From positions 62,001-126,000 of the IMG/VR virus record IMGVR_UViG_3300044641_009805: a DNA stretch of 64,000 bases; one strand, 5' to 3'. Below, piece after piece: positions 1-11,751 of the stretch. A model generated the notes under the pieces. The model ran no database searches. It had not been told where the DNA came from and saw only the letters and a program-made list of their open reading frames with translations. A program made the position numbers and the translations under genes. Each line of letters begins with the position of its first letter. The stretch's first letter is position 1.

Positions 1-135
1 AATGGTCAACCGATCAAGAAGAAGCGTGGGCGTCCGCCGGGGACCAAGAACCGACCGAAGGAGATCGTGGTTGCGGAACGTAAGGCCAAGGCAGAGATGA
101 AGGCCAAGAAGAAAGCAAAGCGTAAGAAGGCTTGA
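1..135 (+). CDS. 3' end of a basic AT-hook-containing protein (partial)
   Basis: Frame 1 reads NGQPIKKKRGRPPGTKNRPKE...KAKKKAKRKKA-stop(133-135); KRGRP is an AT-hook core. Confidence 0.6.
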   Translation, partial: NGQPIKKKRGRPPGTKNRPKEIVVAERKAKAEMKAKKKAKRKKA

Positions 136-142
136 TGGCCAT

Positions 143-216
143 GCCGCTGTAGCTCAGACGGATAGAGCAGATCATTCCTAACGATCAGGCCACAGGTTCG
201 ACTCCTGTCAGCGGTG
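143..216 (+). tRNA. tRNA-Arg (anticodon CCT)
   Basis: Acceptor GCCGCTG/CAGCGGT, D-arm GCTC/GAGC, anticodon loop TT-CCT-AA (175-181) with one A-C mismatch closing the stem, T-loop TTCGACT; CCA not encoded. Confidence 0.9.
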
Positions 217-249
217 CAAAGTTAACCTCAAACAAGGTAAGGTAGAACC

Positions 250-1092
250 ATGGACACGCAAGAGACGCTTCAACGGGCAGCTCAGCTATTGCGAGTAGCT
301 GACGCACTCATCATCACGGCTGGAGCAGGAATGGGGGTGGATAGCGGTCTGCCCGATTTCCGAGGAGATGAAGGTTTCTGGAACGCCTATCCGGCGTACA
401 AGCACCTTGGTCTCACCTTCTCCGACATGGCCAACCCGAGGTGGTTTGAGGATAACCCGGCGTTGGCATGGGGATTCTATGGTCACCGGCTCAACCTGTA
501 CCGAGCGACCCAACCTCACGCAGGCTTCGACGTTCTTAAGCGTCTTGCTCGAGGCATGAAGCATGGTGCCTTCGTCTTCACGTCTAACGTGGATGGTGCC
601 TTCCAGAAGGCTGGTTTCGACCCTGATCGTATCGTGGAATGCCATGGATCCATCCATCACGTCCAGTGTACAAAGGGATGTGGCATCGGCATTCTGCCTG
701 CAGAACGTGTTAAGATCGACGTGGATTCCAAGACGTTTGAGGCCCAGAGCCCGCTACCCGCCTGCCCGCGCTGCGGAGAGCTCTTGAGGCCAAACATCCT
801 GATGTTTGGCGATCCGGGATGGAATTTCTCTCGTGCCGATGAGCAAGACGAGAGGATGACGGAGTGGGTCCGGACCTTAGCAGATCGTCATGTCGCAACC
901 GTTGTCATCGAGTTGGGCGCAGGCAAACACATCCCCAGCGTGCGGGCGAAGAGTTCTTTGTTGTCAAACAAACTCAATGCTCCACTCATTCGCATCAATA
1001 CTCGAGATTCCGATGGTTTCCCCAATACGTTGTCGTTGCCGATGAAGGCAAAGGAGGCTCTCATCGAACTGGAAATCTTGTCAAAATCTTAA
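250..1092 (+). CDS. Sir2/CobB-family NAD-dependent deacylase
   Basis: GAGMGVDSGLPDFRG, TSNVDG, ECHGS, two Cys pairs, RPNILMFGD, ELGAG sirtuin motifs. Confidence 0.92.
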   Translation: MDTQETLQRAAQLLRVADALIITAGAGMGVDSGLPDFRGDEGFWNAYPAYKHLGLTFSDMANPRWFEDNPALAWGFYGHRLNLYRATQPHAGFDVLKRLARGMKHGAFVFTSNVDGAFQKAGFDPDRIVECHGSIHHVQCTKGCGIGILPAERVKIDVDSKTFEAQSPLPACPRCGELLRPNILMFGDPGWNFSRADEQDERMTEWVRTLADRHVATVVIELGAGKHIPSVRAKSSLLSNKLNAPLIRINTRDSDGFPNTLSLPMKAKEALIELEILSKS

Positions 1093-1183
1093 CACCACGC
1101 GGTGCAAACCTTAGACCCATCGTGATATACTGATTTCAACGCTGGCCACTAACCACAACCTCTTGACCTTGAAAGAAAAAGAA

Positions 1184-1375
1184 ATGAGCAACGAGAACAG
1201 CAACATCAGCACGGACACCTGCGACGACTGCGGACGACATGGCCCCGGGACACGTTACGTGCAGGACGACTCGACGACATACTTCATCTGCATGTCGTGT
1301 GGGCCAAAGCAATTCGAAAAGACCGCACGTCGGGACATCGACTCATGGCTGGCAGGAGGTGACTTCGGGGGATGA
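1184..1375 (+). CDS. Small Zn-finger-like hypothetical protein
   Basis: CDDC...CMSC; ATG at 1184 downstream of promoter copy 1103. Confidence 0.65.
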   Translation: MSNENSNISTDTCDDCGRHGPGTRYVQDDSTTYFICMSCGPKQFEKTARRDIDSWLAGGDFGG

Positions 1376-1626
1376 GCTGGAATTACCGAGTTGTCCGCAA
1401 GATCCTCTCTGGTGAAGGATACACCACAACTCAGTACGGAATCCATGAGGTCTACTACGATGACGATCACGTACCGACTTCATGTACCGTCAACCCTGTC
1501 ACCCCTTATGGTGAGTCCGAGGACGAGTTGGCCCAAGACGTGCGGCATTACGCCTCGGCCTTGGAGAAGCCGGTTCTTGATTACGATTCGATCGGTGTAA
1601 AGTCAGAGTCGAACGTGGTAGAGTAG
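1372..1626 (+). CDS. Phage hypothetical protein (WNYRV...IHEVYY type)
   Basis: ATGA overlap with the upstream stop; similar to 2579-2839. Confidence 0.75.
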   Translation: MSWNYRVVRKILSGEGYTTTQYGIHEVYYDDDHVPTSCTVNPVTPYGESEDELAQDVRHYASALEKPVLDYDSIGVKSESNVVE

Positions 1627-1630
1627 AACC

Positions 1631-1765
1631 ATGAAGAACAAGAGGAAGCAAAACCCTATCGCCGTGGCCATGACTCTTCGACACGCCACGACGACAACCC
1701 GTATGAAGGATCGTCGTAACCGGCGCCCGAAGGACGCCCGCCACAAGGAGGACTGGTACAAGTAG
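1631..1765 (+). CDS. 44-aa basic peptide, leaderless (not in ORF track)
   Basis: ATG 6 nt after TAGAGT box; MKNKRKQNPIAVAMTLRHATTTTRMKDRRNRRPKDARHKEDWYK. Confidence 0.75.
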   Translation: MKNKRKQNPIAVAMTLRHATTTTRMKDRRNRRPKDARHKEDWYK

Positions 1766-1782
1766 ACCCAACGGGTTTACCA

Positions 1783-2082
1783 TTGGCGCAGCAGAGATAC
1801 ATTGCGGCAATGGCACGAAAGAAGAAGCAAGAGGCACAAGATAAGCAAGCCTCGATAATCGAGATTCAAATACCGGAAGCAAAGATGGTTCCTGCAAATC
1901 AAGTGGTGCCTGGACAGGTCGTCAAAATTCCAGGCGGTGAGTTTCACAAGGTCGTATCTGTGGATCCCATCCTCGACCCGTCTCACCCTCAGCTCTGGGG
2001 CAATGAAGTCATTGCCAGGGTACAAGATGGCGGGGGAACGAAGCTGGTGATCCTGAAGGGACGGGTCGAACTAGCGGCTTGA
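1783..2082 (+). CDS. Hypothetical protein
   Basis: ORF fills the gap co-directionally; start uncertain. Confidence 0.55.
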   Translation: MAQQRYIAAMARKKKQEAQDKQASIIEIQIPEAKMVPANQVVPGQVVKIPGGEFHKVVSVDPILDPSHPQLWGNEVIARVQDGGGTKLVILKGRVELAA

Positions 2083-2093
2083 TCCTGACACCC

Positions 2094-2172
2094 GGATGAC
2101 CCAGGAGAGGTTTTTAGCAAATCATGGAAGGTTACCAAGGGGTGGCTTTTCGTAACCTCTCCTGGGTCATCC
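2094..2172. repeat. 79-bp palindromic element, copy 1
   Basis: GGATGACCCAGGAGAGG-N45-CCTCTCCTGGGTCATCC with GGTTACC (2130-2136) on the dyad axis. Confidence 0.95.
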
Positions 2173-2214
2173 TCAGGTAGTGTAAAGTCTCAAGGAAAGT
2201 GATATATTAAGACC

Positions 2215-2493
2215 ATGACCGAGGTTCTTGAGTCGATTCCGATTGATCCCATCGTAGAACACCCGACGGATGACATCGCAGCTGGGCCTCTACTTGAGAT
2301 CATGTTCGAAGGAGTTTGGATCCTGGCAGAGGAGGACGTGTTCGGGTGTTGGACTGGGTTGCGGAGGAAGAACGGCGAAGAGATCCATGGGTCGATCTAT
2401 CCTCTCGGGGGGAAGACGTTCTACACAGGTTCTCGGGTCTGCGGGTGCAAGGCATGTCAGGAACATGTGGAGGCGAAGTTCAAGAAGAACTGA
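2215..2493 (+). CDS. Hypothetical protein, leaderless
   Basis: ATG 6 nt after TATATT box; C-terminal CGCKAC. Confidence 0.75.
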   Translation: MTEVLESIPIDPIVEHPTDDIAAGPLLEIMFEGVWILAEEDVFGCWTGLRRKNGEEIHGSIYPLGGKTFYTGSRVCGCKACQEHVEAKFKKN

Positions 2494-2495
2494 TC

Positions 2496-2582
2496 ATGGA
2501 TGAGATGACATTTGGCGACAAAGTTCTGGCTGTTCTCACCATCGGCATCGTGCTGATGGTCTTCGCGATGGAGTTGAAATGA
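2496..2582 (+). CDS. 28-aa single-TM peptide
   Basis: MDEMTFGDKVLAVLTIGIVLMVFAMELK; tightly coupled to both neighbours. Confidence 0.55.
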   Translation: MDEMTFGDKVLAVLTIGIVLMVFAMELK

Positions 2583-2839
2583 AGTCAGACCAACGCATCG
2601 TGAGGCAGATCCTTCCATCAGGTGCCACCTACGATGGTATCTATGAGGTCTACTATGATGAGGAAGGTAGACCTACATCCAGGGCCACTCAACTGTCTAC
2701 TCTCCTCGCCCCAACAACAAAGGCTCTTGTCATAGGACTGAGCGACATGAGACGGGCTTTTGATCGACCTATCTTGCTCGAGGTGAACGATGAACAAGGA
2801 AGATTCGTAGAGATATCTACACAAGGAGACATGACATGA
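2579..2839 (+). CDS. Hypothetical protein, paralog of 1372-1626
   Basis: YDGIYEVYYDEEGRPT vs YGIHEVYYDDDHVPT; AFDRPIL vs ALEKPVL. Confidence 0.7.
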   Translation: MKSDQRIVRQILPSGATYDGIYEVYYDEEGRPTSRATQLSTLLAPTTKALVIGLSDMRRAFDRPILLEVNDEQGRFVEISTQGDMT

Positions 2840-3057
2840 CGACATTCTACAACCAAGAAAAAGCAGCGCTGCTCCAGGCTTTCGTTGCAATCCTCAATGA
2901 TGCAGAGGCCATCCTAGACAAGATCGAAGCCCTTGACATCACGCACAAAGGAGAACCTGATCACGATCATCTGGCTCTGAACGACCTGGTGGCCGACGCC
3001 ATCGAACTCGCGGAGGGGCTACGCGACGCCGCAGACAGCGTCAAAGAAGGAATCTAA
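2836..3057 (+). CDS. Hypothetical helical protein
   Basis: AGGAG SD and ATGA overlap. Confidence 0.7.
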   Translation: MTTFYNQEKAALLQAFVAILNDAEAILDKIEALDITHKGEPDHDHLALNDLVADAIELAEGLRDAADSVKEGI

Positions 3058-3065
3058 CCAAGCGG

Positions 3066-3284
3066 TTGGAAGATACCTTAGACCTGCACGGGGTGTCTCA
3101 TGAGGATGCCTCTGAAATGGTCCACAGGTTCATCAATGATCATTGGGTAGAAGGGTGGACCCTTCACGTCATCACGGGAAACTCTACGAAGATGAAGTCC
3201 ATCGTTCAATCCGTCCTGAACCTGTATCAGGTCGACTGGATTGATGACGAATGGAACGCTGGCAGCATCAAGATTTTTACATAG
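3066..3284 (+). CDS. Stand-alone Smr (small MutS-related) domain protein
   Basis: LDLHGVS.EDA...LHVITGNS...NAGSI Smr signature; TTG start. Confidence 0.8.
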   Translation: MEDTLDLHGVSHEDASEMVHRFINDHWVEGWTLHVITGNSTKMKSIVQSVLNLYQVDWIDDEWNAGSIKIFT

Positions 3285-3324
3285 CTTGTTGTAAAGTCAC
3301 TGAAACAAATGATAGGGTATAATC

Positions 3325-3537
3325 ATGCGGATCTTGCCGACAGACAACGTCGACCTGACGTACTACTCTTCTTCACATCTTAGGTCGATCGGCGAAGCTC
3401 TTGTCGAACGTTTGAAGAAGGGTCAGGTAAGCCTGGTCGGGCTAGATCAAGCTGCTCTAGCGGCTGCAAAATCAGGGATGCCGACACTCCGCGATGTTCT
3501 CAGGTTGAAGGAGGCCTGCAGGCTTGCGGGGGTGTGA
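3325..3537 (+). CDS. Hypothetical protein, leaderless
   Basis: ATG 6 nt after TAGGGT box of copy 3290. Confidence 0.7.
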   Translation: MRILPTDNVDLTYYSSSHLRSIGEALVERLKKGQVSLVGLDQAALAAAKSGMPTLRDVLRLKEACRLAGV

Positions 3538-3803
3538 CAGTGGCGTGGATTGATGACCATAGGATCCTGTTCATCTTCAGAACGGCCATGGAATCATTGA
3601 AGAGAGGAGATGAGGCCTCAGCTCAGTTCTATCTGAAACAAATCCCCCCAGAACAAATGGAGTATGTTTGGGGTCTTGTATCCCAGGCGACGGGTCGACC
3701 CATCCATGAACTTCGTAAACCTTGGTGGAAACGCCACATCAAACTGTTCGTTTCGGGGTTTGTGATTCTTGGAACCATTCTTTACTATACCACACGAGGG
3801 TAA
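3534..3803 (+). CDS. Hypothetical protein with C-terminal TM
   Basis: GTGA overlap; hydrophobic LFVSGFVILGTILYY. Confidence 0.65.
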   Translation: MTVAWIDDHRILFIFRTAMESLKRGDEASAQFYLKQIPPEQMEYVWGLVSQATGRPIHELRKPWWKRHIKLFVSGFVILGTILYYTTRG

Positions 3804-4025
3804 ATGAACAACGATGAATTCAATGACTTGATCATGCGACTCCGCGACTCCTCCACCCCACCACATCTGCGTGAGGAGGTCATCATGGCACTCAAACACC
3901 AACGTCAGATGTTAGAGGATATTTACCTAGGGGCGCGCAACGGACTTCACGTAGCACCAGAGCACCTTGCAGGGGTCGCCCTCGGTAAAACAGGTTACGG
4001 GGGATTGGGTGACATGGGATTCTGA
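3804..4025 (+). CDS. Hypothetical protein
   Basis: Abuts upstream stop; GAGG SD. Confidence 0.65.
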   Translation: MNNDEFNDLIMRLRDSSTPPHLREEVIMALKHQRQMLEDIYLGARNGLHVAPEHLAGVALGKTGYGGLGDMGF

Positions 4026-4026
4026 T

Positions 4027-4251
4027 ATGCAAACGATGACGTCATGCTGGGTGATTCGCACCAAAAATGGTGTTCGAGGTGGACAAGAATTCGTCTACTG
4101 GAACCTTAATGAGGGTTGGGTCTACGATCCAATGTTAGCGACTCGTTATGCAGACGAAGCGGAGGCCTGCGGGTCGATTGCAAACTATGCTGCGAACGGG
4201 TTGTTTCCAGAAAATGGTGTGTCCGCTGTGCAAATCTTCACGACGTCGTGA
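4027..4251 (+). CDS. Hypothetical protein
   Basis: ATG 1 nt after upstream stop; 3' end contains promoter copy 4229. Confidence 0.6.
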   Translation: MQTMTSCWVIRTKNGVRGGQEFVYWNLNEGWVYDPMLATRYADEAEACGSIANYAANGLFPENGVSAVQIFTTS

Positions 4252-4263
4252 TACAGTACGAAT

Positions 4264-4485
4264 GGGTCCATAAATGTGGTTGCGATGGTGACATCGATTC
4301 TGGTTCGAATCCAGATGGATCCCCTGGGATACAGGTCGTGGTAACTTGTAATCCTGACCAAACAATCGTTATGATTGTGGTCATTAGCGGCATGAAGGGC
4401 TGCCACGACAGGAAGCTGCCGATTAAGTAGGTGAACGGAGGACCTTCTTCCTCCATAGTAACTAACCCCGGGTTTCGGAGGAAAC
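4264..4485 (+). ncRNA. Candidate structured RNA: 5' tRNA-like module (4264-4323) plus multi-hairpin domain
   Basis: Starts exactly 6 nt after TACAGT box; acceptor GGGTCCA/TGGATCC, T-arm TCTGG-TTCGAAT-CCAGA, no D-stem, GNRA-capped CGATG/CATCG hairpin, then four more hairpins. Confidence 0.7.
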
Positions 4486-4486
4486 A

Positions 4487-4831
4487 GTGTACAACGATTC
4501 GATTTTCAAGCTAAAGTTGCAGATCGAATTTCTGAATAAGGGTGTCGTACCCCTTGCGTGGAGGCAAGAAAGTGGAGCTCCGACCCACTTCGACATCAAC
4601 AAGATCCTTGCCGAGTTCCCCCCGGACGAGGCCCGCGCGATGAAGCGCAAGTTCCGCAAGCTCTGGAGGAAGCTGGTTGAGCACAGCCTGAAGCGTCCAG
4701 GAAAAAACTCCAGGCGCCGGCTTCATAACATCGAACATGGCGAGGCGATCCCATCCCGCAAGGCGAAGAACTTCAGAAAGGGCGAGGTCCTCAATGCCAT
4801 TCACCGCAAAGTTGCCAAGGCACCCAAATGA
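4487..4831 (+). CDS. Basic hypothetical protein
   Basis: GGAGG SD at 4477-4481, GTG start; MKRKFRKLWRK. Confidence 0.75.
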   Translation: MYNDSIFKLKLQIEFLNKGVVPLAWRQESGAPTHFDINKILAEFPPDEARAMKRKFRKLWRKLVEHSLKRPGKNSRRRLHNIEHGEAIPSRKAKNFRKGEVLNAIHRKVAKAPK

Positions 4832-5109
4832 AGCTGACAGGAACCATGTGGCAGGTGAAGCCCTACGCTCCATCGATATGGGGTAACATCACGGATCATC
4901 CAGCGACGTACGTTGACGTCATCAACAACCGGGTGACCATGATGGGATGCATCCGGCCAGGAGACACGATCCTCATCATCTCTGAGAGAACGAGGTTCTC
5001 CGGTCTGGACAAATACCTCGAGGCTGTCAAAGTGGCCACTCCTGTCCCTGGGTGGTGCAATGCCACATATTTCACCAGCGACTCCTTGTGGATGGAAAGA
5101 ATCGCATAG
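4828..5109 (+). CDS. Hypothetical protein
   Basis: ATGA overlap; stop abuts promoter copy 5111. Confidence 0.65.
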   Translation: MKLTGTMWQVKPYAPSIWGNITDHPATYVDVINNRVTMMGCIRPGDTILIISERTRFSGLDKYLEAVKVATPVPGWCNATYFTSDSLWMERIA

Positions 5110-5146
5110 GTGCAAATCTGCACCTGAACAAGATATAAACAGCATG

Positions 5147-5317
5147 ATGACTCGTGAGGAAATGAAGGCCGCGGCCGACTTCTTGAGGAAGTACGCCACT
5201 GCCGTGGAGACGAAGTTGTACTGGAACATGTCGACCAGTGAGGCGAAGGCTGAAATCAAGGAGGCCAAACATCTAGCAACGTTATTGGACGAGGCAGCAG
5301 AAAAAGAGTGCAACTAG
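5147..5317 (+). CDS. Small hypothetical protein
   Basis: ATG 5144 or 5147 just after TATAAA box. Confidence 0.65.
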   Translation: MTREEMKAAADFLRKYATAVETKLYWNMSTSEAKAEIKEAKHLATLLDEAAEKECN

Positions 5318-5351
5318 TTACACGCACGTGTACACGGGAGCGGTTTTTTGA

Positions 5352-5738
5352 ATGAAGCGATCTGACACCGAGATGTTGCTGATGGCCGCCGGTGCAGGCC
5401 TGCGTAAGTCCGACCTACGGGCATTCAGACTTGGTGCAGTAGGCATCCGGAACGATGGTATCCTCGTATCGGCATCCAATGGTCCTGCCCCTTTCCCCCA
5501 TCCTGATGCCCATGCTGAGGCTCGGCTGACGATGAAGCTGACTCCCGGGTCTGAGATCTGGGTGGCACGTGTTCGGAAGGATGGAACCCTTGGTATCGCC
5601 CGGCCTTGTCCCCGGTGCATGGTGCGTATCCGGGCCGCCGGGGTATCTCGAGTGGCCTACACGATTTCAGATATAGAACATGGAGTGATCCATTTGCACT
5701 CCGGTGGTGAAGTAATGAAGCCGATGAGAGGGCGATGA
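5352..5738 (+). CDS. Zn-dependent cytidine/dCMP deaminase-fold protein
   Basis: HAE ... PCPRC deaminase motif. Confidence 0.85.
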   Translation: MKRSDTEMLLMAAGAGLRKSDLRAFRLGAVGIRNDGILVSASNGPAPFPHPDAHAEARLTMKLTPGSEIWVARVRKDGTLGIARPCPRCMVRIRAAGVSRVAYTISDIEHGVIHLHSGGEVMKPMRGR

Positions 5739-5741
5739 AGC

Positions 5742-5933
5742 ATGCGTGTCAAGAGAATGAAAGAAGGCAAACGTGTGACGCATGAGATGTCGCACAGGGA
5801 GAAGCTTCACTACGATCCTCACCTCGACGTGTACTGGATCGTGACGTTGTTGCCTGACGGGACGCAACACATCGGGTCGCCGTTCGCCACGAGCGCCTTG
5901 GATACCCTGTACAACGCATCTTGGGGGTCGTGA
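5742..5933 (+). CDS. Hypothetical protein
   Basis: Co-directional ORF; start uncertain. Confidence 0.5.
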   Translation: MRVKRMKEGKRVTHEMSHREKLHYDPHLDVYWIVTLLPDGTQHIGSPFATSALDTLYNASWGS

Positions 5934-5987
5934 AAAAAAAGCGCGGGAGCAGTGCAAAGTTTGCGGAAGAAAGTGTATACTGGGACC

Positions 5988-6176
5988 ATGGACCACGTCA
6001 AGAAGCTCACGGTCGTCGACGCAGACAACTCCCGCGAGTACCGCATCGAGGTGGAAGAGGGCCCGCTGCCTTACACGACGCGGATCGTGTTCGGGCCAAG
6101 CTTCTCGATCACCCTCCAGAACGAGGACGTCGCGACGCTCGCTCAGCTTCTCATGCAGGCTTCTTCGGACGTCTGA
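5988..6176 (+). CDS. Hypothetical protein, leaderless
   Basis: ATG 6 nt after TATACT (5976-5981). Confidence 0.75.
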   Translation: MDHVKKLTVVDADNSREYRIEVEEGPLPYTTRIVFGPSFSITLQNEDVATLAQLLMQASSDV

Positions 6177-6230
6177 AAAAAGTTCTCCACCCGGTGCAAA
6201 GTTCCACTTCGAAAATGTATATATAGGATC

Positions 6231-6593
6231 ATGAACAGCATCAAGTACGTGGCCATCCTCAACGACACCATCAAGACCCTCCGACTCAATGTCGATCCGG
6301 CGCAGCTGAACCACCTGCGTGCCGCCGCCGCGGAGATCGACCAACTCCGTGGAGAGGTCGCCGACCTCGCCTTCGGCCTGTCGAAACGGCTCGCCGCCTA
6401 CGCGGCCGACATCGACGCTGGCCGCACCAGCGTCGAGCTACCTACCGCGTCGATGAAGGGTGCGAACGACCTTCTCTTCATGCAAAAGAAGAACGACGCC
6501 CTCCTGCGAAAAGCCGAGGGCTTCCCGCTCCTCCTCACCGGGGCTCTCGGTTTCGAAGCCGAGAAGAAGTTCTTCGAACTCATCCGGGGCTGA
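6231..6593 (+). CDS. Hypothetical protein, paralog of 13595-13957
   Basis: Promoter copy 6195; AAAEIDQLR...KRLAAYAADIDAGRT...FFELIRG. Confidence 0.8.
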   Translation: MNSIKYVAILNDTIKTLRLNVDPAQLNHLRAAAAEIDQLRGEVADLAFGLSKRLAAYAADIDAGRTSVELPTASMKGANDLLFMQKKNDALLRKAEGFPLLLTGALGFEAEKKFFELIRG

Positions 6594-6647
6594 AAAAAAG
6601 TTCTCCCCTCGGTGCAAAGTTCTACCTCGAAAAGGTATACTGAAGCC

Positions 6648-6920
6648 ATGAACACCTTCCCGATCATCCTCGACGGTTCGAAGTTCGACTGGTACAACGC
6701 CTCCGCCGCGCACGGCATGGGATCGATCAGCGATCATCCTGGCTTCCCGCAGTCCGGCTGGGCACCGGGTCAGGTCGCGGTCCGCAGCCACCGTACGGGC
6801 AAGGTGGTGGCCTTCAAGTTCGTCGAGATCGCCAACGACGGCGAGGGCAACGTCAGCCTCAACTACGAGGGCACTCTCCCCGACGGCCGCTACTGCGCAC
6901 TTTCTCTCGCGGTCGGCTGA
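6648..6920 (+). CDS. Hypothetical protein, leaderless
   Basis: ATG 6 nt after TATACT (6636-6641). Confidence 0.75.
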   Translation: MNTFPIILDGSKFDWYNASAAHGMGSISDHPGFPQSGWAPGQVAVRSHRTGKVVAFKFVEIANDGEGNVSLNYEGTLPDGRYCALSLAVG

Positions 6921-6961
6921 GGGCAGTGCAAAGTCAACCTCAGGTAAGGTAAGGTAGAACC

Positions 6962-7192
6962 ATGAAGCGAAACTCCTCTCCCAAGTCGAAGGTTCTCGAG
7001 CTGGCTTCCTTCTGCGTCTCGGAAGGCACACCCCTCGAGGTCCGCAGCACCCGCATCAAGGGGCGGTTCGGTGGCGACTTCCTCGTCGAGGTCGACGCGG
7101 GCACTCAGGTCTTGGCCCGAGCCCGCCACCGCAACTGGCGCACGGCCTACAAGCTTCTCGGCATCGAACTGTCACGCCGGGGTGTCGCCTGA
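6962..7192 (+). CDS. Hypothetical protein, leaderless
   Basis: ATG 6 nt after TAAGGT. Confidence 0.75.
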   Translation: MKRNSSPKSKVLELASFCVSEGTPLEVRSTRIKGRFGGDFLVEVDAGTQVLARARHRNWRTAYKLLGIELSRRGVA

Positions 7193-7228
7193 GTGCAAAG
7201 CGCACGGTGAATGAGGTAAGATAGAACC

Positions 7229-7960
7229 ATGGACGCCACACCCCGGATCGAAGCCCTCCGCACCGCTAAGGCCATCATCGGCTCTCACGGTGTGGTTGCG
7301 CACATGAACAAGTACAACCGAGAAGTCCTCGCTCGGGAGGTGACCGAGGGATCGACGGGGATGCGGTGCGACTTCAACCTGGACCCCGCTCGCAGCGCCT
7401 GGCACGAGTCCAACCCGTCGGTCACGTTGGTGGTCGCCTACAATGCGGACCCGAAGGGGGCACAGCTCAATGATGAAGGTGCCATGGTGCTAGAAAACTA
7501 CCTACGTATCGCCGTGGGGACTTCAGGCGGCGACATGGACCTAGAGACGCTGAAGCAGCGGGAAAGCATGGTCTCGATGGTTGCCATGCTGGGAGAAATG
7601 CTGACAACGACGTTGCCCCAGAAGATCACGTTGACCATGGAGTCACCCGCTCAGGTGGTCGAGAGGACACAACGCCAGCACGAGCAGTTCGTTGGCAAGC
7701 AAATCTACGACAACCTCGGTGAGGCGGCCTTCAAGGGCCTCCGCGTCGATGGCTCAGGCCGATTCGTACGCCTCACTTCCACCTACGCTTCTGTGGCCGG
7801 AAAGTACCCGGATTCTGGGACCTACCGGTTCCGTCACGTCCGTCGAGTTGACCGTAGGGGTTGCCCCAAGGAAGTCGCCAACTATTCGATCCGGGTGTTC
7901 GGGTGTGGAGACGGTAGCCTCCCTCCTTCGGTCGCGATTCATCGCATCAAGGCAGTGTAA
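7229..7960 (+). CDS. Hypothetical protein, leaderless
   Basis: ATG 6 nt after TAAGAT; its TAA lies inside the next TGTAAA box. Confidence 0.8.
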   Translation: MDATPRIEALRTAKAIIGSHGVVAHMNKYNREVLAREVTEGSTGMRCDFNLDPARSAWHESNPSVTLVVAYNADPKGAQLNDEGAMVLENYLRIAVGTSGGDMDLETLKQRESMVSMVAMLGEMLTTTLPQKITLTMESPAQVVERTQRQHEQFVGKQIYDNLGEAAFKGLRVDGSGRFVRLTSTYASVAGKYPDSGTYRFRHVRRVDRRGCPKEVANYSIRVFGCGDGSLPPSVAIHRIKAV

Positions 7961-7990
7961 AGTTCCTCAGAGAGGTGATAGAGTAGAACC

Positions 7991-8017
7991 ATGGAAACGA
8001 TCAAGATCGGCATCTGA
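7991..8017 (+). CDS. 8-aa leaderless upstream ORF METIKIGI
   Basis: ATG at the canonical position 6 nt after TAGAGT; TGA at 8015-8017. Confidence 0.45.
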   Translation: METIKIGI

Positions 8018-8055
8018 CCCAATCCACCCGCCAACCTTCCGCCCAGGAGAACTAC

Positions 8056-8451
8056 ATGTCGACTCGCTCTTTCATCGGAATCCAGAATCTCGACGGCACG
8101 GTCACCGGCGTCTACTGCCACCATGATGGATATCTCGACGGCGTCGGAGCGACCCTCAAGGCCCACTACACGACGGTCCGCCAGGTGCTCGACCTCGTGG
8201 CGCTCGGCTCGTTGTCCTCTCTCCATGAGGACCTCGACTACACGCAGGCCTACCATCGTGACCGTGGTGATGACCTCGACATCTCCACCTACGACTCCCC
8301 TGTTGACATCAGCTTCGACGACGGAGGCTACGAGTTCGTCTACCTCTTCCGGCCGTCGGATGAGCGAGGATCGACCTATAGCTGGCACTACGCAGACCGT
8401 GAGGTCTTCGGCAAAGGTCCCGAGTTCAAGCCCCTCGCCTTCGCGGTGTAA
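8056..8451 (+). CDS. Conserved phage hypothetical protein (STRS.IG...YCHHDGY type)
   Basis: AGGAG SD; motif I recognise from other phages, function unknown. Confidence 0.8.
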   Translation: MSTRSFIGIQNLDGTVTGVYCHHDGYLDGVGATLKAHYTTVRQVLDLVALGSLSSLHEDLDYTQAYHRDRGDDLDISTYDSPVDISFDDGGYEFVYLFRPSDERGSTYSWHYADREVFGKGPEFKPLAFAV

Positions 8452-8481
8452 AGTCAACCCCCAACAAGATAAGGTAACAAC

Positions 8482-8724
8482 ATGACACGACGAGTTACGA
8501 ACAAGCTTCTCGAGATGATGGAAGAGGGCGCCTTGGATGCCGAGGTGCTGGTGAGGGCCTGCCTGACCTTCATGTCGGAGGCCGACGTGGCCGAGATGGC
8601 CGTGGGTGAGGGGTTCCTCGAGGAGGAGGACGCAGAGATCGACGAGGACGAAGATGAGGATGAGGTAGGCGAGGATGATGAGGAGGAAGAGCCCCTCTCA
8701 ACCTTCGGGGTGGACGACGACTGA
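8482..8724 (+). CDS. Highly acidic small protein, leaderless
   Basis: C-terminal D/E tract EEEDAEIDEDEDEDEVGEDDEEEE. Confidence 0.8.
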   Translation: MTRRVTNKLLEMMEEGALDAEVLVRACLTFMSEADVAEMAVGEGFLEEEDAEIDEDEDEDEVGEDDEEEEPLSTFGVDDD

Positions 8725-8776
8725 AAAAGTGCGGGCGGCGGTGCAAAGTCCTGTGTGATCGTGGTAGATTGGAACC

Positions 8777-9520
8777 ATGCCGATCATCAAGAAGAGCTAC
8801 GCCTACGGTCCCGGCCCCTCCACGTCGGAGGTGTACTTCCAGCACCGCGTCCTGCGGATCGAGAAGACCACGGAGACCCGCAACTGGTCGGACACGCTCG
8901 ACTACTCGGACCACCGCTCGACGGAGTGCACCTGGGCCCTCGTGTGGCTCGGTACCCGCGGCGTTCCAGCCCGCGATGCCCACTACGCCGGCGGTCGCAC
9001 CGTCGCCTACTTCGACGCCCTCAAGTGGGACGCCGACAAGATCCGCGACCTCGAGGTCCACGAGCAGTTTGCCTGGGTGGATTGCACCAACCTCTTCGTG
9101 GATCGTAACGGCTACTCGCTGGTGCCTTCGGTCGATCCTTTCGACATGCAGCTCCTCCACGGCGGTCCGGAGATGATCGAGGGGCTCGCGGTCTGGGAGG
9201 CCTACCACACGGCTCGGATCGCCCGTGCGGAGGCGGAACGGATGGCCAAGGTCGCCGAAGCTGCTGCCCAGGTCGCCGCCGAGAAGGCGAAGAGGGATGC
9301 CCGCCAAGCAAAGCGAGATGCCAAGCTCCAGGCCGAGAAGGCGGTGGCTGAGGGTCAGTTGGCCCGGATCCCCGCCAAGGGCACCACGGTCACGGTCGAT
9401 GGGTTCACCGGCAAGGTCTTCTGGATCGGTGTCTCCAAGTACCGCGGCAAGTGGAATGCCCGGGCAGGGGTGAAGGACCCCAAAGGGAACGTCCAGTGGG
9501 TCCCGGCAGATAAGTTCTGA
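8777..9520 (+). CDS. Hypothetical protein with Ala/Lys coiled coil and C-terminal beta domain
   Basis: ATG 6 nt after TAGATT; GC3-rich codon pattern. Confidence 0.8.
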   Translation: MPIIKKSYAYGPGPSTSEVYFQHRVLRIEKTTETRNWSDTLDYSDHRSTECTWALVWLGTRGVPARDAHYAGGRTVAYFDALKWDADKIRDLEVHEQFAWVDCTNLFVDRNGYSLVPSVDPFDMQLLHGGPEMIEGLAVWEAYHTARIARAEAERMAKVAEAAAQVAAEKAKRDARQAKRDAKLQAEKAVAEGQLARIPAKGTTVTVDGFTGKVFWIGVSKYRGKWNARAGVKDPKGNVQWVPADKF

Positions 9521-9537
9521 CCCTCGTCCCACCCCCA

Positions 9538-9616
9538 GGATGACCCAGGAGAGGTTCCTGAAACTGGGGGTGGGGTAACCTAGGTCGAATTGTCCTAGGC
9601 CTCTCCTGGGTCATCC
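9538..9616. repeat. 79-bp palindromic element, copy 2
   Basis: Same 17-bp arms (extendable to 21 bp, 9534-9620), N45, GGTAACC (9574-9580) on the dyad axis. Confidence 0.95.
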
Positions 9617-9682
9617 TGGGTGACCTGAGAAAAAGTGCCCATGTCGGTGCAAAGTTCCACCGGGAAAGGGTATACTGGGACC

Positions 9683-9769
9683 ATGAAGAACGCCGCCGCT
9701 GACATCCTCGGAGCCATCGTCACCGTCGCCACCACGGCCTTCGCGGCCTGGTGGATGATGGCCGCCTGA
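9683..9769 (+). CDS. 28-aa hydrophobic peptide, leaderless (not in ORF track)
   Basis: MKNAAADILGAIVTVATTAFAAWWMMAA; own promoter copy 9648. Confidence 0.7.
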   Translation: MKNAAADILGAIVTVATTAFAAWWMMAA

Positions 9770-9809
9770 ACCCGGTGCAAAGTCACCCATGACAAGATAT
9801 ATACTTGTC

Positions 9810-10136
9810 ATGAAACTGACCACGAAACAGCTAAGAAGCTTGATCAACGAAGTCCTTGAAGAAGAAGGAGTGACACCGGCCATGACCACCGACCAACTCA
9901 AGGAGATCGCGGCGGAACTCACCAAGGCGGAGAAGGCGGCCTTCCTCAACGCCCGGCCTTACCCCCCGGATGGTCGGGTCCAACTGCCTTCGGGCCGGGT
10001 CCTCGACGTCGGCTCTTGGGAAGCCGCCATGGAACTCAACACCCTCGTCATGTTGCCGCAGAAGAAGATCGGAACAGGCCGAGGTGGTCTGAAGGGTCGC
10101 CCGGCCTGGCTGAAAAAAGCGCTCGGCTACTACTGA
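9810..10136 (+). CDS. Hypothetical protein with MKLT..QLR.LI.E N-terminal motif
   Basis: MKLTTKQLRSLINEVLEEE; promoter copy 9776. Confidence 0.8.
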   Translation: MKLTTKQLRSLINEVLEEEGVTPAMTTDQLKEIAAELTKAEKAAFLNARPYPPDGRVQLPSGRVLDVGSWEAAMELNTLVMLPQKKIGTGRGGLKGRPAWLKKALGYY

Positions 10137-10175
10137 GCGGTGCAAAGTCAACCTCGAACAGGATAAGGTAGAACC

Positions 10176-10397
10176 ATGGACAACATCAAGATCTTCGTGG
10201 TGCAGCAGGGTGCAATGTCCTATTCCAACGTCGACGAGGTCACCTACGTGTTCCTCAACGAGGCGGACGCTCGGGTCAAGTACGCGTACCTCCTCGAGAA
10301 CCGGGTGGTCGAGTGCGACTCTTACGACAGGACCTGGACTTCCCTCCACGCGGTGACTCCTGGCGACGAGGTGTCGCAGGACAACAAGATCGCCTGA
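10176..10397 (+). CDS. Hypothetical protein, leaderless
   Basis: Promoter copy 10141. Confidence 0.75.
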   Translation: MDNIKIFVVQQGAMSYSNVDEVTYVFLNEADARVKYAYLLENRVVECDSYDRTWTSLHAVTPGDEVSQDNKIA

Positions 10398-10433
10398 GTG
10401 CAAAGTCAACCTCGAACAGGATAAGGTAGAACC

Positions 10434-10751: not shown

Positions 10752-10792
10752 ACCCGGTGCAAAGTTCGACCGTGATAGGGTATACTAGGACC

Positions 10793-11035: not shown

Positions 11036-11039
11036 CCCA

Positions 11040-11117: not shown

Positions 11118-11174
11118 TCGAGGGAGTGCAAGGGGACGGTGCAAAGTTCCACCGGAGAGGGATAAGATGGACCC

Positions 11175-11705: not shown

Positions 11706-11751
11706 CACGAGATCGGTGCAAAGTCACCCCTGAATAGGGTATACTGGGACC

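What the first reader, a model, noticed from the sequence alone, without database searches (positions are those of the whole stretch)
4229..4324. Promoter-driven 60-nt tRNA mimic (acceptor + T arm, G3-U70, no D stem, no anticodon loop)
Seen: promoter copy TGCAAA(4229)-N17-TACAGT(4252-4257) is followed after exactly 6 nt not by ATG but by GGGTCCA (4264). This pairs with TGGATCC (4316-4322) and stacks on a canonical T arm, TCTGG-TTCGAAT-CCAGA. Between them are an unpaired D-like loop (TAAATGTGGTTG) and a 5-bp hairpin closed by a GTGA (GNRA) tetraloop. Known: G3-U70 is the AlaRS identity pair, and a stemless D loop plus acceptor/T arm is the architecture of the tmRNA tRNA-like domain; however the discriminator here is C, not A. 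Inference: a tmRNA-TLD-like decoy (SmpB, EF-Tu, anticodon nuclease or Ro binding) or an RNase processing tag. Its 5' end at the predicted +1 independently supports the promoter model.
Basis: partly seen in the sequence, partly recalled or inferred. Interest (0 to 1): 0.85.

Follow-up and report, generated by a model that had tools for sequence, protein, structure and literature searches.

The report
Anticodon-less tRNA remnant heading phage leader
A 60-base piece of an uncultivated giant T4-like phage folds like the top half of a tRNA with no anticodon; evolution has kept this shape, it descends from a real lysine tRNA gene, and it most likely acts as a processing or stability handle at the start of a structured RNA leader, not as a tmRNA-like decoy.

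Summary
The promoter copy (4229-4257) belongs to a family of about 21 promoters that otherwise sit 6 nt before a leaderless ATG. Here the same position is G4264, the first base of a 7-bp acceptor stem stacked on a canonical T arm.

I found 10 distinct variants (50-60 nt) in related metagenomic phages.
- The acceptor stem is paired in 100% of cells and the T stem in 98%.
- Six pairs carry compensatory double changes; 0 of 500 shuffles reach this.
- The middle part is free to vary: the D-like loop shrinks from 12 to 0-2 nt and the tetraloop sequence is not kept.

At the same position a sister clade carries a full tRNA-Lys(UUU) with CCA, so the element is a truncated but selected tRNA derivative.

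It is not a tmRNA tRNA-like domain.
- G3-U70 becomes A-U in one clade.
- The discriminator is C, U or A, and no CCA is encoded.
- ARAGORN and Rfam are negative.

The element always precedes a conserved, unannotated structured leader (GGUGAA-hairpin-AGUAAC plus a pseudoknot) and a small basic protein gene.

Best reading (about 0.5): a cis tRNA-shaped processing or stability module. An alanine acceptor or an acceptor-end decoy remain possible. I rate it a new variant of a known kind, of moderate to high interest.

The parts
4027..4251 (+). Upstream small gene (74 aa, no family). Its last codons (GTG CAA ATC TTC = VQIF) contain the -35 element, and its stop TGA 4249-4251 lies in the promoter spacer.
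   Evidence: The relatives' reads show the same GTGCAAATCTT overlap.
4229..4257 (+). Promoter copy: -35 TGCAAA (4229-4234), 17-nt spacer containing the palindrome CACGACGTCGTG (4239-4250), -10 TACAGT (4252-4257) preceded by TGA (an extended -10-like TGnTA). The predicted start is G4264.
   Evidence: family of about 21 copies followed by leaderless ATG. The promoter is conserved in relatives. The palindrome is not conserved.
4264..4270 (+). Acceptor stem, 5' strand GGGUCCA
   Evidence: All 7 pairs are paired in 10 of 10 variants. Pairs 6-67 (C-G/U-A) and 7-66 (A-U/G-C) covary.
4271..4282 (+). D-arm remnant, unpaired (UAAAUGUGGUUG). UGG is kept in the six long variants, and the segment is reduced to 0-2 nt in the four short variants.
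4283..4296 (+). Short hairpin CGAUG-GUGA-CAUCG, standing where the anticodon arm would be. A 4-6 bp hairpin with a 4-5 nt loop is present in every variant, but its sequence, register and loop differ.
   Evidence: (helix 2)
4299..4315 (+). T arm UCUGG-UUCGAAU-CCAGA. The T loop is UUCRAAY in all variants.
   Evidence: 98% paired; 4 of 5 pairs with changes on both sides
4316..4323 (+). Acceptor stem 3' strand UGGAUCC plus discriminator C4323. No CCA is encoded; CUGG follows.
4324..4486 (+). Conserved structured leader.
- P1: 4326-4335 with 4345-4354.
- P2: UGACC 4355-4359 with GGUCA 4379-4383, enclosing ACAAUC 4362-4367 with GAUUGU 4373-4378.
- P3: GCGGC 4387-4391 with GCUGC 4415-4419.
- GAAGG 4394-4398 pairs with the loop CCUUC 4443-4447 (pseudoknot).
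- GGUGAA 4430-4435, hairpin GGAGGA 4437-4442 with UCCUCC 4449-4454, AGUAAC 4457-4462.
- Shine-Dalgarno GGAGG 4477-4481.
   Evidence: Compensatory changes read from the alignments: ACAAUC/GAUUGU to GCAAUC/GAUUGC; GAAGG/CCUUC to GAAAG/CUUUC and to AGAGG/CCUCU. No Rfam family.
4487..4831 (+). Downstream gene. GTG start, 114 aa, basic, all-helical, with the invariant motif LPPDEARAMKRKFRKLWR. It belongs to a large unannotated family.

Best explanation
**What it is (shown).** The element is a 60-nt, non-decoding RNA three-way junction that keeps only the top half of a tRNA.
- It has a 7-bp acceptor stem stacked on a 5-bp T stem with a canonical UUCRAAY T loop.
- It also has a remnant of the D region and a short hairpin where the anticodon arm was.
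- It descends from a phage tRNA-Lys(UUU)-type gene that still exists at the same place in a sister clade.
- Selection has kept the two arms through compensatory changes while the middle drifts.
- It lies between a promoter that should start transcription at its first base and a conserved 163-nt structured leader of a small basic protein gene.

**How it most likely works (inferred).** It acts in cis as a tRNA-shaped end module for that leader RNA.
- In the ancestral arrangement (promoter, small ORF, tRNA-Lys, leader, gene), host tRNA-processing enzymes cut the tRNA out and so define the ends of the neighbouring RNAs.
- After decoding was lost, the determinants those enzymes read (acceptor stem, T arm, T loop) were retained.
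- In the clade where the element is internal to a transcript, it still carries the A-C-C that bacterial RNase P reads, and RNase P would create a 5' end at G1.
- In the window's clade, the promoter delivers G1 directly as a fully base-paired 5' end.
- Either way the transcript begins with a compact tRNA-like fold. That fold should resist 5'-end-dependent decay. It also offers a defined 3' cleavage point just before helix P1 of the leader.
For: - **Structure under selection.** Acceptor 100% paired and T stem 98% paired in 10 distinct variants; 6 pairs with double changes; 0 of 500 shuffles reach this; slid controls give 31-49% pairing.
- **Conservation by segment.** Against the window, the arms are 79-100% identical and the 5' acceptor strand 71-100%. 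The middle is 50-86% and the flanking coding DNA 52-81%.
- **Not coding.** Element lengths of 60, 59, 58, 57, 54, 52 and 50 nt differ by non-multiples of three.
- **tRNA origin.** L024, L026 and L027 carry a tRNA-Lys(UUU) with ACCA at the same site, followed by a homologous leader. Model R1 scores this tRNA at 34.6 bits (E = 1.4e-6), but the window's tRNA-Glu at only 8.6 bits.
- **Always attached to the leader.** All three clades place the tRNA or element 1-5 nt before helix P1.
- **Promoter fusion is conserved.** The -10 to G1 distance is 6-7 nt in the variants read upstream.
- **Processing signature.** R-C-C follows the acceptor only where 5' cutting is needed: ACCA in the tRNA-Lys clade; ACCC in the L038-L040 clade, which sits 6 nt after a stop codon with no promoter. 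It does not in the promoter-fused clade, which has N-CUGG.
- **No decoding.** Loops are 4-5 nt, and ARAGORN and Rfam are negative.
- **3' context.** The window's genuine tRNAs also lack encoded CCA, and tRNA-Glu has the same C-U-G after its discriminator.
- **Precedents.** mascRNA at the MALAT1 3' end is processed by RNase P, RNase Z and the CCA-adding enzyme (PMC8457004). MHV68 TMERs have a non-aminoacylated viral tRNA-like module fused to downstream RNA hairpins, with RNase Z processing (PMC4337559).
Against: - There are no transcript data. The start at 4264, any cleavage at 4323/4324, and stability effects are all inferred.
- A plain hairpin would protect a 5' end just as well. Stability alone therefore does not explain why a canonical T loop and the first five acceptor pairs stay constant.
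- In the window's clade the 3' trailer is partly base-paired into P1 (1-3 free nt). By what is reported for RNase Z (PMC8457004, citing Nashimoto 1999), this should hinder 3' cleavage. Whether the element is released or stays attached is open.
- G3.U70 is kept in all 9 variants of the window's clade although a single transition would strengthen the helix. This hints at a function that reads that pair.
- Thirty-two more distant members of the protein family have no tRNA or element at all, so the module is dispensable for the gene family as such.
Confidence: 0.5

Rival explanations
1. It is a free-standing alanine-accepting mini-tRNA, convergent on the tmRNA tRNA-like domain. The element is cut at C4323, receives CCA, and is charged by host AlaRS through G3.U70. 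AlaRS ignores the anticodon. The Ala-RNA then serves SmpB- or EF-Tu-dependent or non-ribosomal alanine transfer, or it sequesters these factors.
For: - G3.U70 and G2-C71 are present and invariant in the 9 variants of the window's clade, while neighbouring pairs 6-67 and 7-66 changed on both sides.
- The ancestor-like tRNA-Lys has G3-C70, so U70 is a derived state.
- The bacterial alanine identity set includes G2-C71 and G3.U70, and minihelices are alanylated (PMC9976931, citing Francklyn and Schimmel 1989).
- The phage's real tRNAs also rely on post-transcriptional CCA addition.
Against: - The L038/L039/L040 clade has A3-U70.
- G-C, G.U and A-U at one pair across the three clades is an ordinary compensatory path.
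- Other alanine determinants fail: the discriminator is C, U or A where A73 is expected, pair 4-69 is U-A and not G-C, and the G20 region is not conserved (PMC9976931).
- There is no tag ORF or resume codon. Reading frames downstream are not conserved (read).
- ARAGORN and Rfam find no tmRNA.
- No SmpB or AlaRS was found among the 40 ORFs scanned.
Confidence: 0.12
2. It is a decoy or sponge that mimics the tRNA top half. Expressed early from its own promoter, the element titrates a host factor that recognises the acceptor and T-arm end of tRNAs. Candidates are a defence nuclease or transferase acting on tRNA 3' tails or acceptor stems, or a tRNA-end processing or repair enzyme.
For: - Only the acceptor stem, T arm and T loop are conserved.
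- It has a dedicated promoter in the early-looking, promoter-dense region.
- The ancestor is a tRNA-Lys(UUU), the tRNA species that phages carry to neutralise tRNA-cleaving immunity (PARIS: PMC11464382).
- Immunity that cleaves tRNA tails exists (Cas12a3: PMC12851939).
Against: - The element is physically joined to a conserved leader and gene in all three clades, which a trans-acting decoy does not need.
- There is one copy per window and no multi-copy arrangement.
- It encodes no CCA tail.
- There is no defence-related neighbour and no direct evidence of any target.
Confidence: 0.15
3. It is part of an autoregulatory operator. The basic 114-aa protein encoded downstream binds tRNA or rRNA-like structures. 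It also binds the tRNA-like element and/or the GAA/AGUA loop-E-like hairpin in its own leader to repress translation, as ribosomal-protein and ThrRS leaders do by molecular mimicry.
For: - The leader has a candidate anti-SD arrangement. CCUCC 4450-4454 can pair either with GGAGG 4437-4441 or with the Shine-Dalgarno GGAGG 4477-4481.
- The GGUGAA-hairpin-AGUAAC motif travels with this protein family even in distant relatives, where it lies downstream of the gene.
- The protein is very basic, with an invariant KRKFRKLWR helix.
Against: - Distant homologs keep the motif but have no tRNA-like element, so the element is not the conserved partner.
- Similarity to bL20 is not significant (PDB profile E about 2.7; Foldseek E 5.7-8.3; no Pfam hit).
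- There is no evidence of RNA binding.
Confidence: 0.1
4. It is a decaying tRNA pseudogene with no function of its own, carried along between a promoter and a functional leader.
For: - It is a truncated tRNA derivative.
- The middle third evolves as fast as, or faster than, the neighbouring coding DNA.
- Many relatives of the gene do without it.
Against: - Six stem pairs show compensatory double changes with 98-100% pairing.
- The T loop is invariant as UUCRAAY.
- The arms are more conserved than the flanking genes.
- It is retained in two clades whose downstream proteins share only about 36% identity.
- A simple deletion would remove it, yet none of the 10 variants has lost an arm.
Confidence: 0.05

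Closest known systems
mascRNA at the 3' end of MALAT1 (and the MEN-beta tRNA-like element)
   Same: It is a ~60-nt tRNA-like fold without a usable anticodon loop, embedded in a longer functional RNA. It is kept because tRNA-processing enzymes (RNase P, RNase Z, CCA-adding enzyme) recognise it and so define the end of the neighbouring RNA (PMC8457004).
   Different: mascRNA is eukaryotic and nuclear, and it lies 3' of its partner RNA. It keeps a cloverleaf with a D arm. Here the element lies 5' of its partner, lacks a D stem, sits at a promoter +1, and processing is unproven.
Murid gammaherpesvirus 68 TMERs (viral tRNA-like module fused to pre-miRNA hairpins)
   Same: It is a virus-encoded, non-aminoacylated tRNA-like module at the 5' end of a transcript, followed directly by functional RNA hairpins. 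RNase Z processing separates the modules (PMC4337559).
   Different: TMERs belong to an animal virus, and there the tRNA-like part also provides the internal pol III promoter. Those are full cloverleaf-like vtRNAs. Here a bacterial-type promoter lies upstream and the downstream RNA is an mRNA leader.
tmRNA tRNA-like domain (TLD)
   Same: In the window's variant there is an acceptor stem with G3.U70, a T arm, an unpaired D-like loop, no anticodon, and a helix leaving the junction where the anticodon stem would be.
   Different: - The helix is a closed 4-6 bp hairpin, not P2 leading to pseudoknots and a tag ORF.
- The discriminator is not A and no CCA is encoded.
- G.U and the D-like loop are not conserved across the family.
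- It is derived from a tRNA-Lys-type gene.
- ARAGORN and the Rfam tmRNA models do not detect it.
Phage T4 stable RNAs species 1 and 2 (rnaC, rnaD), and RNase P-processed phage RNAs such as P1/P7 C4 RNA (from memory, not checked here)
   Same: They are small phage RNAs next to or among tRNA genes, with tRNA-like ends handled by the host tRNA-processing machinery. The function of the T4 species is still unknown.
   Different: No sequence or model was available to compare. Those RNAs are 119-140 nt free species and are not promoter-fused 5' modules of a leader. No match was found in GenBank phages by DNA.
Bacterial and phage Y RNA-like YrlA (tRNA-like partner of Ro/Rsr)
   Same: It is a non-decoding RNA that mimics the tRNA elbow, with acceptor-like and T-arm-like helices. 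Some jumbo phages encode Ro/TROVE with a tRNA-like partner (PMC7824862).
   Different: In YrlA the RNA ends form the Ro-binding stem and the acceptor-like helix is closed by a loop (from memory). Here the acceptor is open and the opposite arm is capped. There is no Rfam hit, and no TROVE protein among the ORFs scanned.
Phage-encoded tRNA-Lys(UUU) used against tRNA-cleaving immunity
   Same: The sister clade carries a bona fide tRNA-Lys(UUU) at the same locus. This is the likely ancestor state and the same tRNA species that phage T5 uses to neutralise PARIS (PMC11464382).
   Different: The window's element has no anticodon loop and cannot replace a cleaved tRNA in translation.

Membership tests
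canonical tRNA | 7-bp acceptor stem closed by the 5' and 3' ends | tested here: met
   GGGUCCA/UGGAUCC. 100% paired in 10 variants, with covariation at pairs 6-67 and 7-66.
canonical tRNA | T arm: 5-bp stem and a 7-nt loop with U54 U55 C56 R57 A58 | tested here: met
   UCUGG-UUCGAAU-CCAGA. The loop is UUCRAAY in all variants and the stem is 98% paired. G53-C61 is A-U in L033 and L034.
canonical tRNA | D stem (pairs 10-25 to 13-22) | tested here: not met
   There is no pairing in 4271-4282. The segment is 0-12 nt long across variants.
canonical tRNA | Anticodon arm with a 7-nt loop | tested here: not met
   The loop is 4 nt (GUGA), and 4-5 nt in all variants.
canonical tRNA | Recognised by ARAGORN or Rfam RF00005 | tested here: not met
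   There was no call at gathering threshold or at E <= 10. Relatives were also negative. The same tools do find the sister-clade tRNA-Lys (68.7 bits).
tmRNA tRNA-like domain | G3.U70 alanine identity pair, conserved | tested here: inconclusive
   It is present in the 9 variants of the window's clade, A-U in the L038-L040 clade, and G-C in the tRNA-Lys clade.
tmRNA tRNA-like domain | Discriminator A73 and a 3' CCA end | tested here: not met
   The discriminator is C in the window and U or A in relatives. It is followed by CUGG, and no CCA is encoded. Post-transcriptional CCA addition cannot be tested here.
tmRNA tRNA-like domain | Helix P2 leaving the junction towards pseudoknots and a tag-peptide ORF with a resume codon | tested here: not met
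   The helix is a closed 5-bp hairpin. The downstream frames are not conserved between variants (read). ARAGORN finds no tmRNA or tag.
tmRNA tRNA-like domain | Detected by tmRNA covariance models | tested here: not met
   There was no tmRNA-clan hit, even at E <= 10, on 4100-4500.
tmRNA tRNA-like domain | SmpB binding | not testable with these tools
   No SmpB domain was found among the 40 window ORFs scanned in Pfam. Only 64 of 278 kb was seen.
cis tRNA-like processing module (mascRNA / TMER type) | A non-decoding tRNA-like fold directly abutting a conserved functional RNA in the same transcript | tested here: met
   The element lies 1-5 nt before helix P1 of a conserved leader in all three clades. 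That they share one transcript is inferred from the promoter position and the absence of a terminator.
cis tRNA-like processing module (mascRNA / TMER type) | The fold is conserved by covariation while anticodon function is absent | tested here: met
cis tRNA-like processing module (mascRNA / TMER type) | Cleavage by RNase P and/or RNase Z at the element's ends | not testable with these tools
   The evidence is only indirect. An R-C-C motif is present exactly in the clades where the element is internal to a transcript.
YrlA / bacterial Y RNA | A Ro-binding stem formed by the RNA ends, a tRNA-like domain distal to it, and a gene next to rsr (Ro/TROVE) | tested here: not met
   The topology is the opposite: open acceptor and capped distal arm. 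There is no Rfam hit and no TROVE domain among the scanned ORFs.
plant-virus 3' tRNA-like structures | Located at the 3' end of an RNA genome, with a pseudoknotted acceptor arm and a CCA(-like) end | tested here: not met
   This is a DNA phage. The element is at the 5' end of a transcript with a plain 7-bp acceptor helix.

The most novel reading that the evidence does not exclude
The element is released, CCA-tailed and used in trans as an anticodon-less mini-tRNA. Either it is an alanine acceptor charged through G3.U70, an independent reinvention of the tmRNA tRNA-like domain from a tRNA-Lys gene. Or it is a decoy that soaks up host immunity or enzymes that act on tRNA acceptor ends. It would be the first phage-encoded tRNA top-half mimic with a trans function.
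Probability: 0.15. Interest if true: 0.85.

Novelty: new variant of a known kind. Interest (0 to 1): 0.6.

Why it matters
Phage tRNA genes are usually discussed as codon-usage helpers or as replacements for tRNAs destroyed by immunity. This locus shows a different fate. A phage tRNA gene lost decoding entirely, yet its enzyme-recognition half has been kept by selection and fused to a promoter and to a structured leader RNA.

That gives a natural, minimal bacterial-virus counterpart to mascRNA and to the herpesvirus tRNA-like modules. It could serve as a compact, evolution-tested tag for defining or protecting RNA ends in bacteria.

It also exposes two unannotated partners that could be studied together. 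One is a new RNA motif (GGUGAA-hairpin-AGUAAC with a pseudoknot). The other is a large family of small basic proteins (541 clusters).

If the rarer reading is true, with charging by AlaRS or decoy action, it would bear on how tmRNA-like domains arise. It would also bear on the arms race around tRNA-targeting defence.

Tried and rejected
- **Known RNA families.** ARAGORN, Rfam at gathering threshold, and Rfam at E <= 10 on 4100-4500 gave no tRNA, tmRNA, Y RNA or other family. The only hit was a weak antisense match to Plastid-ycf2, which also matches the antisense strand of the real tRNA-Lys and so probably just reflects tRNA likeness.
- **GenBank phages.** Megablast and blastn with the locus, and tblastn with the 114-aa protein, found nothing.
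- **Bacterial genomes.** A pattern scan of the genome collection found no copy.
- **Paralogs.** Model R1 run without filters found only this one copy in the window.
- **Coding explanation.** Several ORFs overlap the element (4116-4430 on the + strand and three on the - strand). I rejected them because the variants differ by non-multiples of three and the changes are stem-compensating.
- **Alternative pairing.** The D-like loop could pair with the 3' T-stem strand, as the minimum-energy folds of L010 and L028 suggested. I rejected this because it does not covary in L033.
- **Promoter-spacer palindrome** CACGACGTCGTG as an operator: it is not conserved in relatives.
- **bL20 lead.** The protein shares an RxKRxFRKLW motif with ribosomal protein bL20. 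The match is not significant in the PDB profile search (E about 2.7), is absent in Pfam for all 19 members, and reaches only E 5.7-8.3 and TM about 0.26 in Foldseek.
- **Order of events.** A protein tree to decide whether truncation happened once was unresolved.
- **Leader structure.** RNAalifold on the whole leader gave only a partial consensus. P2, P3 and the pseudoknot were read by eye from the alignments.
- **Missing DNA.** Two look-ups returned no DNA (P0011 and one P0008 contig).
Full report
**1. The observation**

- -35 TGCAAA 4229-4234, a 17-nt spacer, -10 TACAGT 4252-4257, then six bases (ACGAAT).
- GGGTCCA 4264-4270 pairs with TGGATCC 4316-4322, giving a G.T at the third pair.
- T arm: TCTGG-TTCGAAT-CCAGA, 4299-4315.
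- Twelve unpaired bases at 4271-4282.
- A 5-bp hairpin with a GTGA loop at 4283-4296.
- C4323 in the discriminator position.

The promoter is a true member of a repeat family. The relaxed pattern gives 23 hits against 6.2 expected, and no shuffle reaches 23. Twenty-one hits lie on the + strand between 215 and 13588. The repeat finder shows these copies followed, six bases after the -10, by ATG. That is a leaderless design in which the A of ATG is the expected start. At 4264 the same position holds G1 of the acceptor stem.

ViennaRNA predicts the proposed three-way junction for this sequence. The energy alone is unremarkable (z about -1.6 to -1.7). ARAGORN finds only tRNA-Arg(CCU) at 143-217 and tRNA-Glu(UUC) at 20717-20789. 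Rfam finds the same two. Even at E <= 10 there is no tRNA, tmRNA or Y RNA hit on 4100-4500.

**2. Where the window comes from**

Exact and degenerate pattern scans place the locus on IMG/VR contig 3300044641_009805 (278 kb). Locus coordinates put the window at about 62001-126000 of that contig. A near-identical 58-kb contig also carries it.

The window encodes a T4-type set of structural genes: Gp23 capsid protein, gp20 portal, large terminase and prohead protease. It also encodes a sigma-70-family factor, UvdE, a ligase, a PhoH-PIN protein, ClpP and a Sir2 protein.

The nearest cultured capsid relatives are only 35-43% identical: Microcystis phage Mel-JY01 and Flavobacterium phages. Neither the locus nor the downstream protein matches any GenBank phage. 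No copy was found in the bacterial genome collection.

**3. Homologs and covariation**

Several routes yielded ten distinct versions of the element, 50-60 nt long (list):
- loci fetched with the two flanking proteins;
- a metagenome scan anchored on the T loop and the downstream RNA, which left the acceptor free to vary;
- look-ups of contigs that encode homologs of the downstream protein.

On their alignment (A4), results per helix were as follows.

| Helix | Cells paired | Pairs that change on both sides |
|---|---|---|
| Acceptor stem | 100% | 6-67 (C-G/U-A), 7-66 (A-U/G-C) |
| T stem | 98% | four of five: 49-65 (C-G, U.G, U-A), 50-64 (C-G, U-A, G-C), 51-63 (U-A, A-U), 53-61 (G-C, A-U) |

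None of 500 column shuffles reaches the observed pairing or covariation. Sliding the partners by 1-3 columns lowers pairing to 31-49%.

Every variant folds on its own into acceptor, short hairpin and T arm.

The middle is not constrained in sequence.
- The D-like loop is 10-12 nt, with a conserved UGG, in six variants. It is 0-2 nt in four.
- The hairpin stem is different in sequence and register.
- The loop reads GUGA, GCGA, AUAG, ACGG, ACUA, GUGG, AUGG, GUUGG or GCGG.

Against the window, identity by segment is as follows.

| Segment | Identity to the window |
|---|---|
| 5' acceptor strand | 71-100% |
| T arm plus 3' acceptor strand | 79-96% |
| Middle | 50-86% |
| Flanking coding DNA | 52-81% |

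Length differences that are not multiples of three, together with stem-compensating changes, rule out the overlapping ORFs. The element is therefore a real RNA structure under selection, not a chance fold.

**4. Origin**

In the clade whose downstream protein is about 50% identical (L024, L026, L027), the same position holds a full-length tRNA-Lys(UUU). Its acceptor is GGGUCCG/CGGACCC and ACCA is encoded. ARAGORN calls it, and Rfam scores it at 68.7 bits. A homologous leader follows it.

The covariance model built only from the truncated elements scores this tRNA at 34.6 bits (E = 1.4e-6). It gives the window's own tRNA-Glu only 8.6 bits. The resemblance is therefore specific and not generic tRNA likeness.

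The 5' third of the element (GGGUCCA-UAAAUGU-GGUUG) still resembles the tRNA's acceptor and D region (GGGUCCG-UAGUGUAAC-GGUUAG). The region from the 3' D-stem strand through the anticodon arm and variable loop is replaced by the short hairpin.

A third clade (L038-L040, protein about 36% identical) has a 50-nt version with acceptor GGAUCCA/UGGAUCC, which gives A3-U70.

The protein tree does not resolve the order of the three clades. The two truncated clades share A7-U66 and U70 against the tRNA, which suggests one truncation.

The most distant homologs examined (L025, L036, and 32 viral contigs L045-L076) have neither a tRNA nor the element.

**5. Context**

In the window's clade the -35 lies in the last codons of the upstream gene (VQIF), and that gene's stop lies in the spacer. 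The distance from the -10 to G1 is 6-7 nt in the variants whose upstream sequence was read.

In the tRNA-Lys clade a similar promoter is followed by what looks like a leaderless 27-codon hydrophobic ORF. The tRNA begins 7 nt after its stop (read by eye).

In the L038 clade the element begins 6 nt after the stop of an upstream gene, with no promoter. There its 5' end would have to be made by RNase P.

What follows the acceptor differs by clade.

| Clade | Sequence after the acceptor | Position of the element |
|---|---|---|
| tRNA-Lys (L024, L026, L027) | A-C-C-A | internal to a transcript |
| L038-L040 | A-C-C-C | internal to a transcript |
| Window's clade | (C/U/A)-C-U-G-G | fused to a promoter |

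Bacterial RNase P reads an R-C-C motif (established knowledge, from memory). That motif is thus present exactly where 5' cutting is needed and absent where a promoter supplies the end. This rests on three clades only.

The window's real tRNAs also lack encoded CCA, and tRNA-Glu is followed by C-U-G like the element.

**6. The leader**

The 163 nt between the element and the GTG start at 4487 are 63-91% identical among relatives, more than the flanking genes in most comparisons. They contain:
- helix P1 (4326-4335 with 4345-4354);
- P2 (4355-4359 with 4379-4383, enclosing 4362-4367 with 4373-4378; here A-U becomes G-C in L009);
- P3 (GCGGC 4387-4391 with GCUGC 4415-4419; GCCGC in L018, GGGGC/GCCUC in L033);
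- a module GGUGAA 4430-4435, hairpin 4437-4454, AGUAAC 4457-4462. The hairpin stem covaries completely across clades.

The hairpin loop CCUUC (4443-4447) can pair with GAAGG (4394-4398). The partners change together: GAAAG/CUUUC in L018 and AGAGG/CCUCU in L038 (read from the alignment). This indicates a pseudoknot.

The GAA opposite AGUA looks like a loop-E (bulged-G) module. That is my inference and was not tested.

CCUCC 4450-4454 could pair either with GGAGG 4437-4441 or with the Shine-Dalgarno GGAGG 4477-4481.

No Rfam family matches this leader or its counterparts.

In four distant relatives (L045, L046, L059, L074) the same GGUGAA-hairpin-AGUAAC module lies 100-150 nt downstream of the protein gene. 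A terminator-like hairpin follows it, and in L046 so does a promoter of the same GTGCAAAGT type. The motif is therefore linked to the protein family more widely than the tRNA-like element is.

**7. The downstream protein**

It has 114 aa, is basic, and carries the invariant motif LPPDEARAMKRKFRKLWR. The profile finds 541 clusters at E <= 0.001. There is no Pfam, PHROG or NCBIfam match and no informative name. The AlphaFold model is all-helical (pLDDT 77) and has no significant PDB neighbour. A short resemblance to ribosomal protein bL20 is not significant.

**8. Interpretation**

What is shown:
- a conserved, non-decoding tRNA derivative reduced to the acceptor and T-arm half plus a variable hairpin;
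- always placed directly 5' of a conserved structured leader;
- in the window's clade, fused to a promoter at +1.

What I infer: it is kept because host tRNA enzymes or RNA-decay enzymes read that half. It would serve as a cis module that sets and protects the 5' end of the leader RNA, and possibly gives a defined cut before P1. I put this at about 0.5. Known parallels are mascRNA (PMC8457004) and the MHV68 tRNA-like modules (PMC4337559).

The evidence against is real.
- A simple hairpin would protect an end equally well.
- The trailer is partly paired in the window's clade.
- G3.U70 is held in all nine variants of that clade.

I therefore keep the following rivals.

| Rival | Weight | Main points |
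|---|---|---|
| Alanine-accepting mini-tRNA | 0.12 | Weakened by A3-U70 in one clade, a variable discriminator, U4-A69 and no CCA. The bacterial alanine identity set is A73, G2-C71, G3.U70, G4-C69 and G20 (PMC9976931). |
| Top-half decoy for acceptor-end-targeting factors | 0.15 | tRNA-tail-cleaving and tRNA-Lys-cleaving immunity exist (PMC12851939, PMC11464382). |
| Operator for the basic protein | 0.10 | The motif, not the element, travels with the protein family. |
| Functionless relic | 0.05 | Contradicted by covariation. |

**9. Comparison with the known, and verdict**

The element fails the defining tests for a canonical tRNA: it has no D stem, no 7-nt anticodon loop, and no detector calls it. 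It fails the tests for a tmRNA tRNA-like domain: no P2, pseudoknots or tag, no A73-CCA, G.U not universal, and no model hit. It also fails for YrlA and for plant-virus TLS. It meets the testable features of a cis tRNA-like processing module. The decisive feature, cleavage, cannot be tested here.

I found no description of such an element in phages, either in the literature searches or in GenBank phages. I rate it a new variant of a known kind, with interest 0.6.

Noticed in passing
window 4430-4462; L024 1718-1751; L038 108-143; L045 1889-1922; L046 1913-1945; L059 1920-1952; L074 1946-1980: A recurrent RNA module, GGUGAA, then a fully covarying 4-7 bp hairpin, then AGUAAC(Y)A. It may be a loop-E-like GAA/AGUA motif. 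In the window's relatives its hairpin loop forms a pseudoknot with an upstream GAAGG. It accompanies the 114-aa protein family, upstream of the gene in some clades and 100-150 nt downstream in others. There is no Rfam match.
   Followed up: partly
window 4487-4831: A small basic all-helical protein with the invariant motif LPPDEARAMKRKFRKLWR. The family has 541 clusters (at 50% identity) at E <= 0.001 and no Pfam, PHROG or NCBIfam model. No structural neighbour was found. Its resemblance to the bL20 motif RxKRxFRKLW is not significant.
   Followed up: partly
window 215-13600, + strand: About 21 copies of a promoter-like repeat, (C)GGTGCAAAGTY, about 14 nt, GGTAWRST, 6 nt, ATG. Each heads a small ORF that would be translated without a leader. 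Many copies are preceded by an A-rich run after a GC-rich hairpin. A sigma-70-family factor is encoded at 16902-17735. Whether it or the host sigma reads these promoters is unknown.
   Followed up: partly
window 1-16000 versus 28000-64000: There is a sharp composition split within one contig. The promoter-dense small-gene region has 51-62% G+C. The T4-like structural and replication region has 30-39%. This could reflect a mosaic origin, different selective regimes or an assembly chimera. I did not resolve it.
   Followed up: no
window 143-243: The 3' end of tRNA-Arg(CCU) (…CAGCGGTG) overlaps the -35 (GTGCAAAGTT) of the next promoter. Neither this tRNA nor tRNA-Glu (20717-20789) encodes CCA.
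   Followed up: partly
window 2090-2173, 9534-9617, 11036-11118: Three copies of a long inverted repeat (CCCAGGATGACCCAGGAGAGG … CCTCTCCTGGGTCATCCT) lie between genes. They may be conserved terminators or another structured RNA.
   Followed up: no
window 11346-11575: Tandem 9-nt-periodic repeats (GGNCCNNNN) of the kind that encode collagen-like Gly-X-Y repeats.
   Followed up: no
L024 1437-1547; L026 1668-1778: In the tRNA-Lys clade the promoter is followed by an apparently leaderless 27-codon hydrophobic ORF (MLGIKLICIFVAFVLFPLGMAWRLDNR in L026). It ends 7 nt before the tRNA. This ORF is absent from the window's clade, where the promoter abuts the truncated element.
   Followed up: no
window 250-1092; 5352-5738; 55965-57443: Three genes of note: a Sir2-family protein directly after tRNA-Arg, a small cytidine/dCMP deaminase-like protein two genes downstream of the locus (also kept in relatives L020 and L028), and a PIN-PhoH fusion protein.
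   Followed up: no
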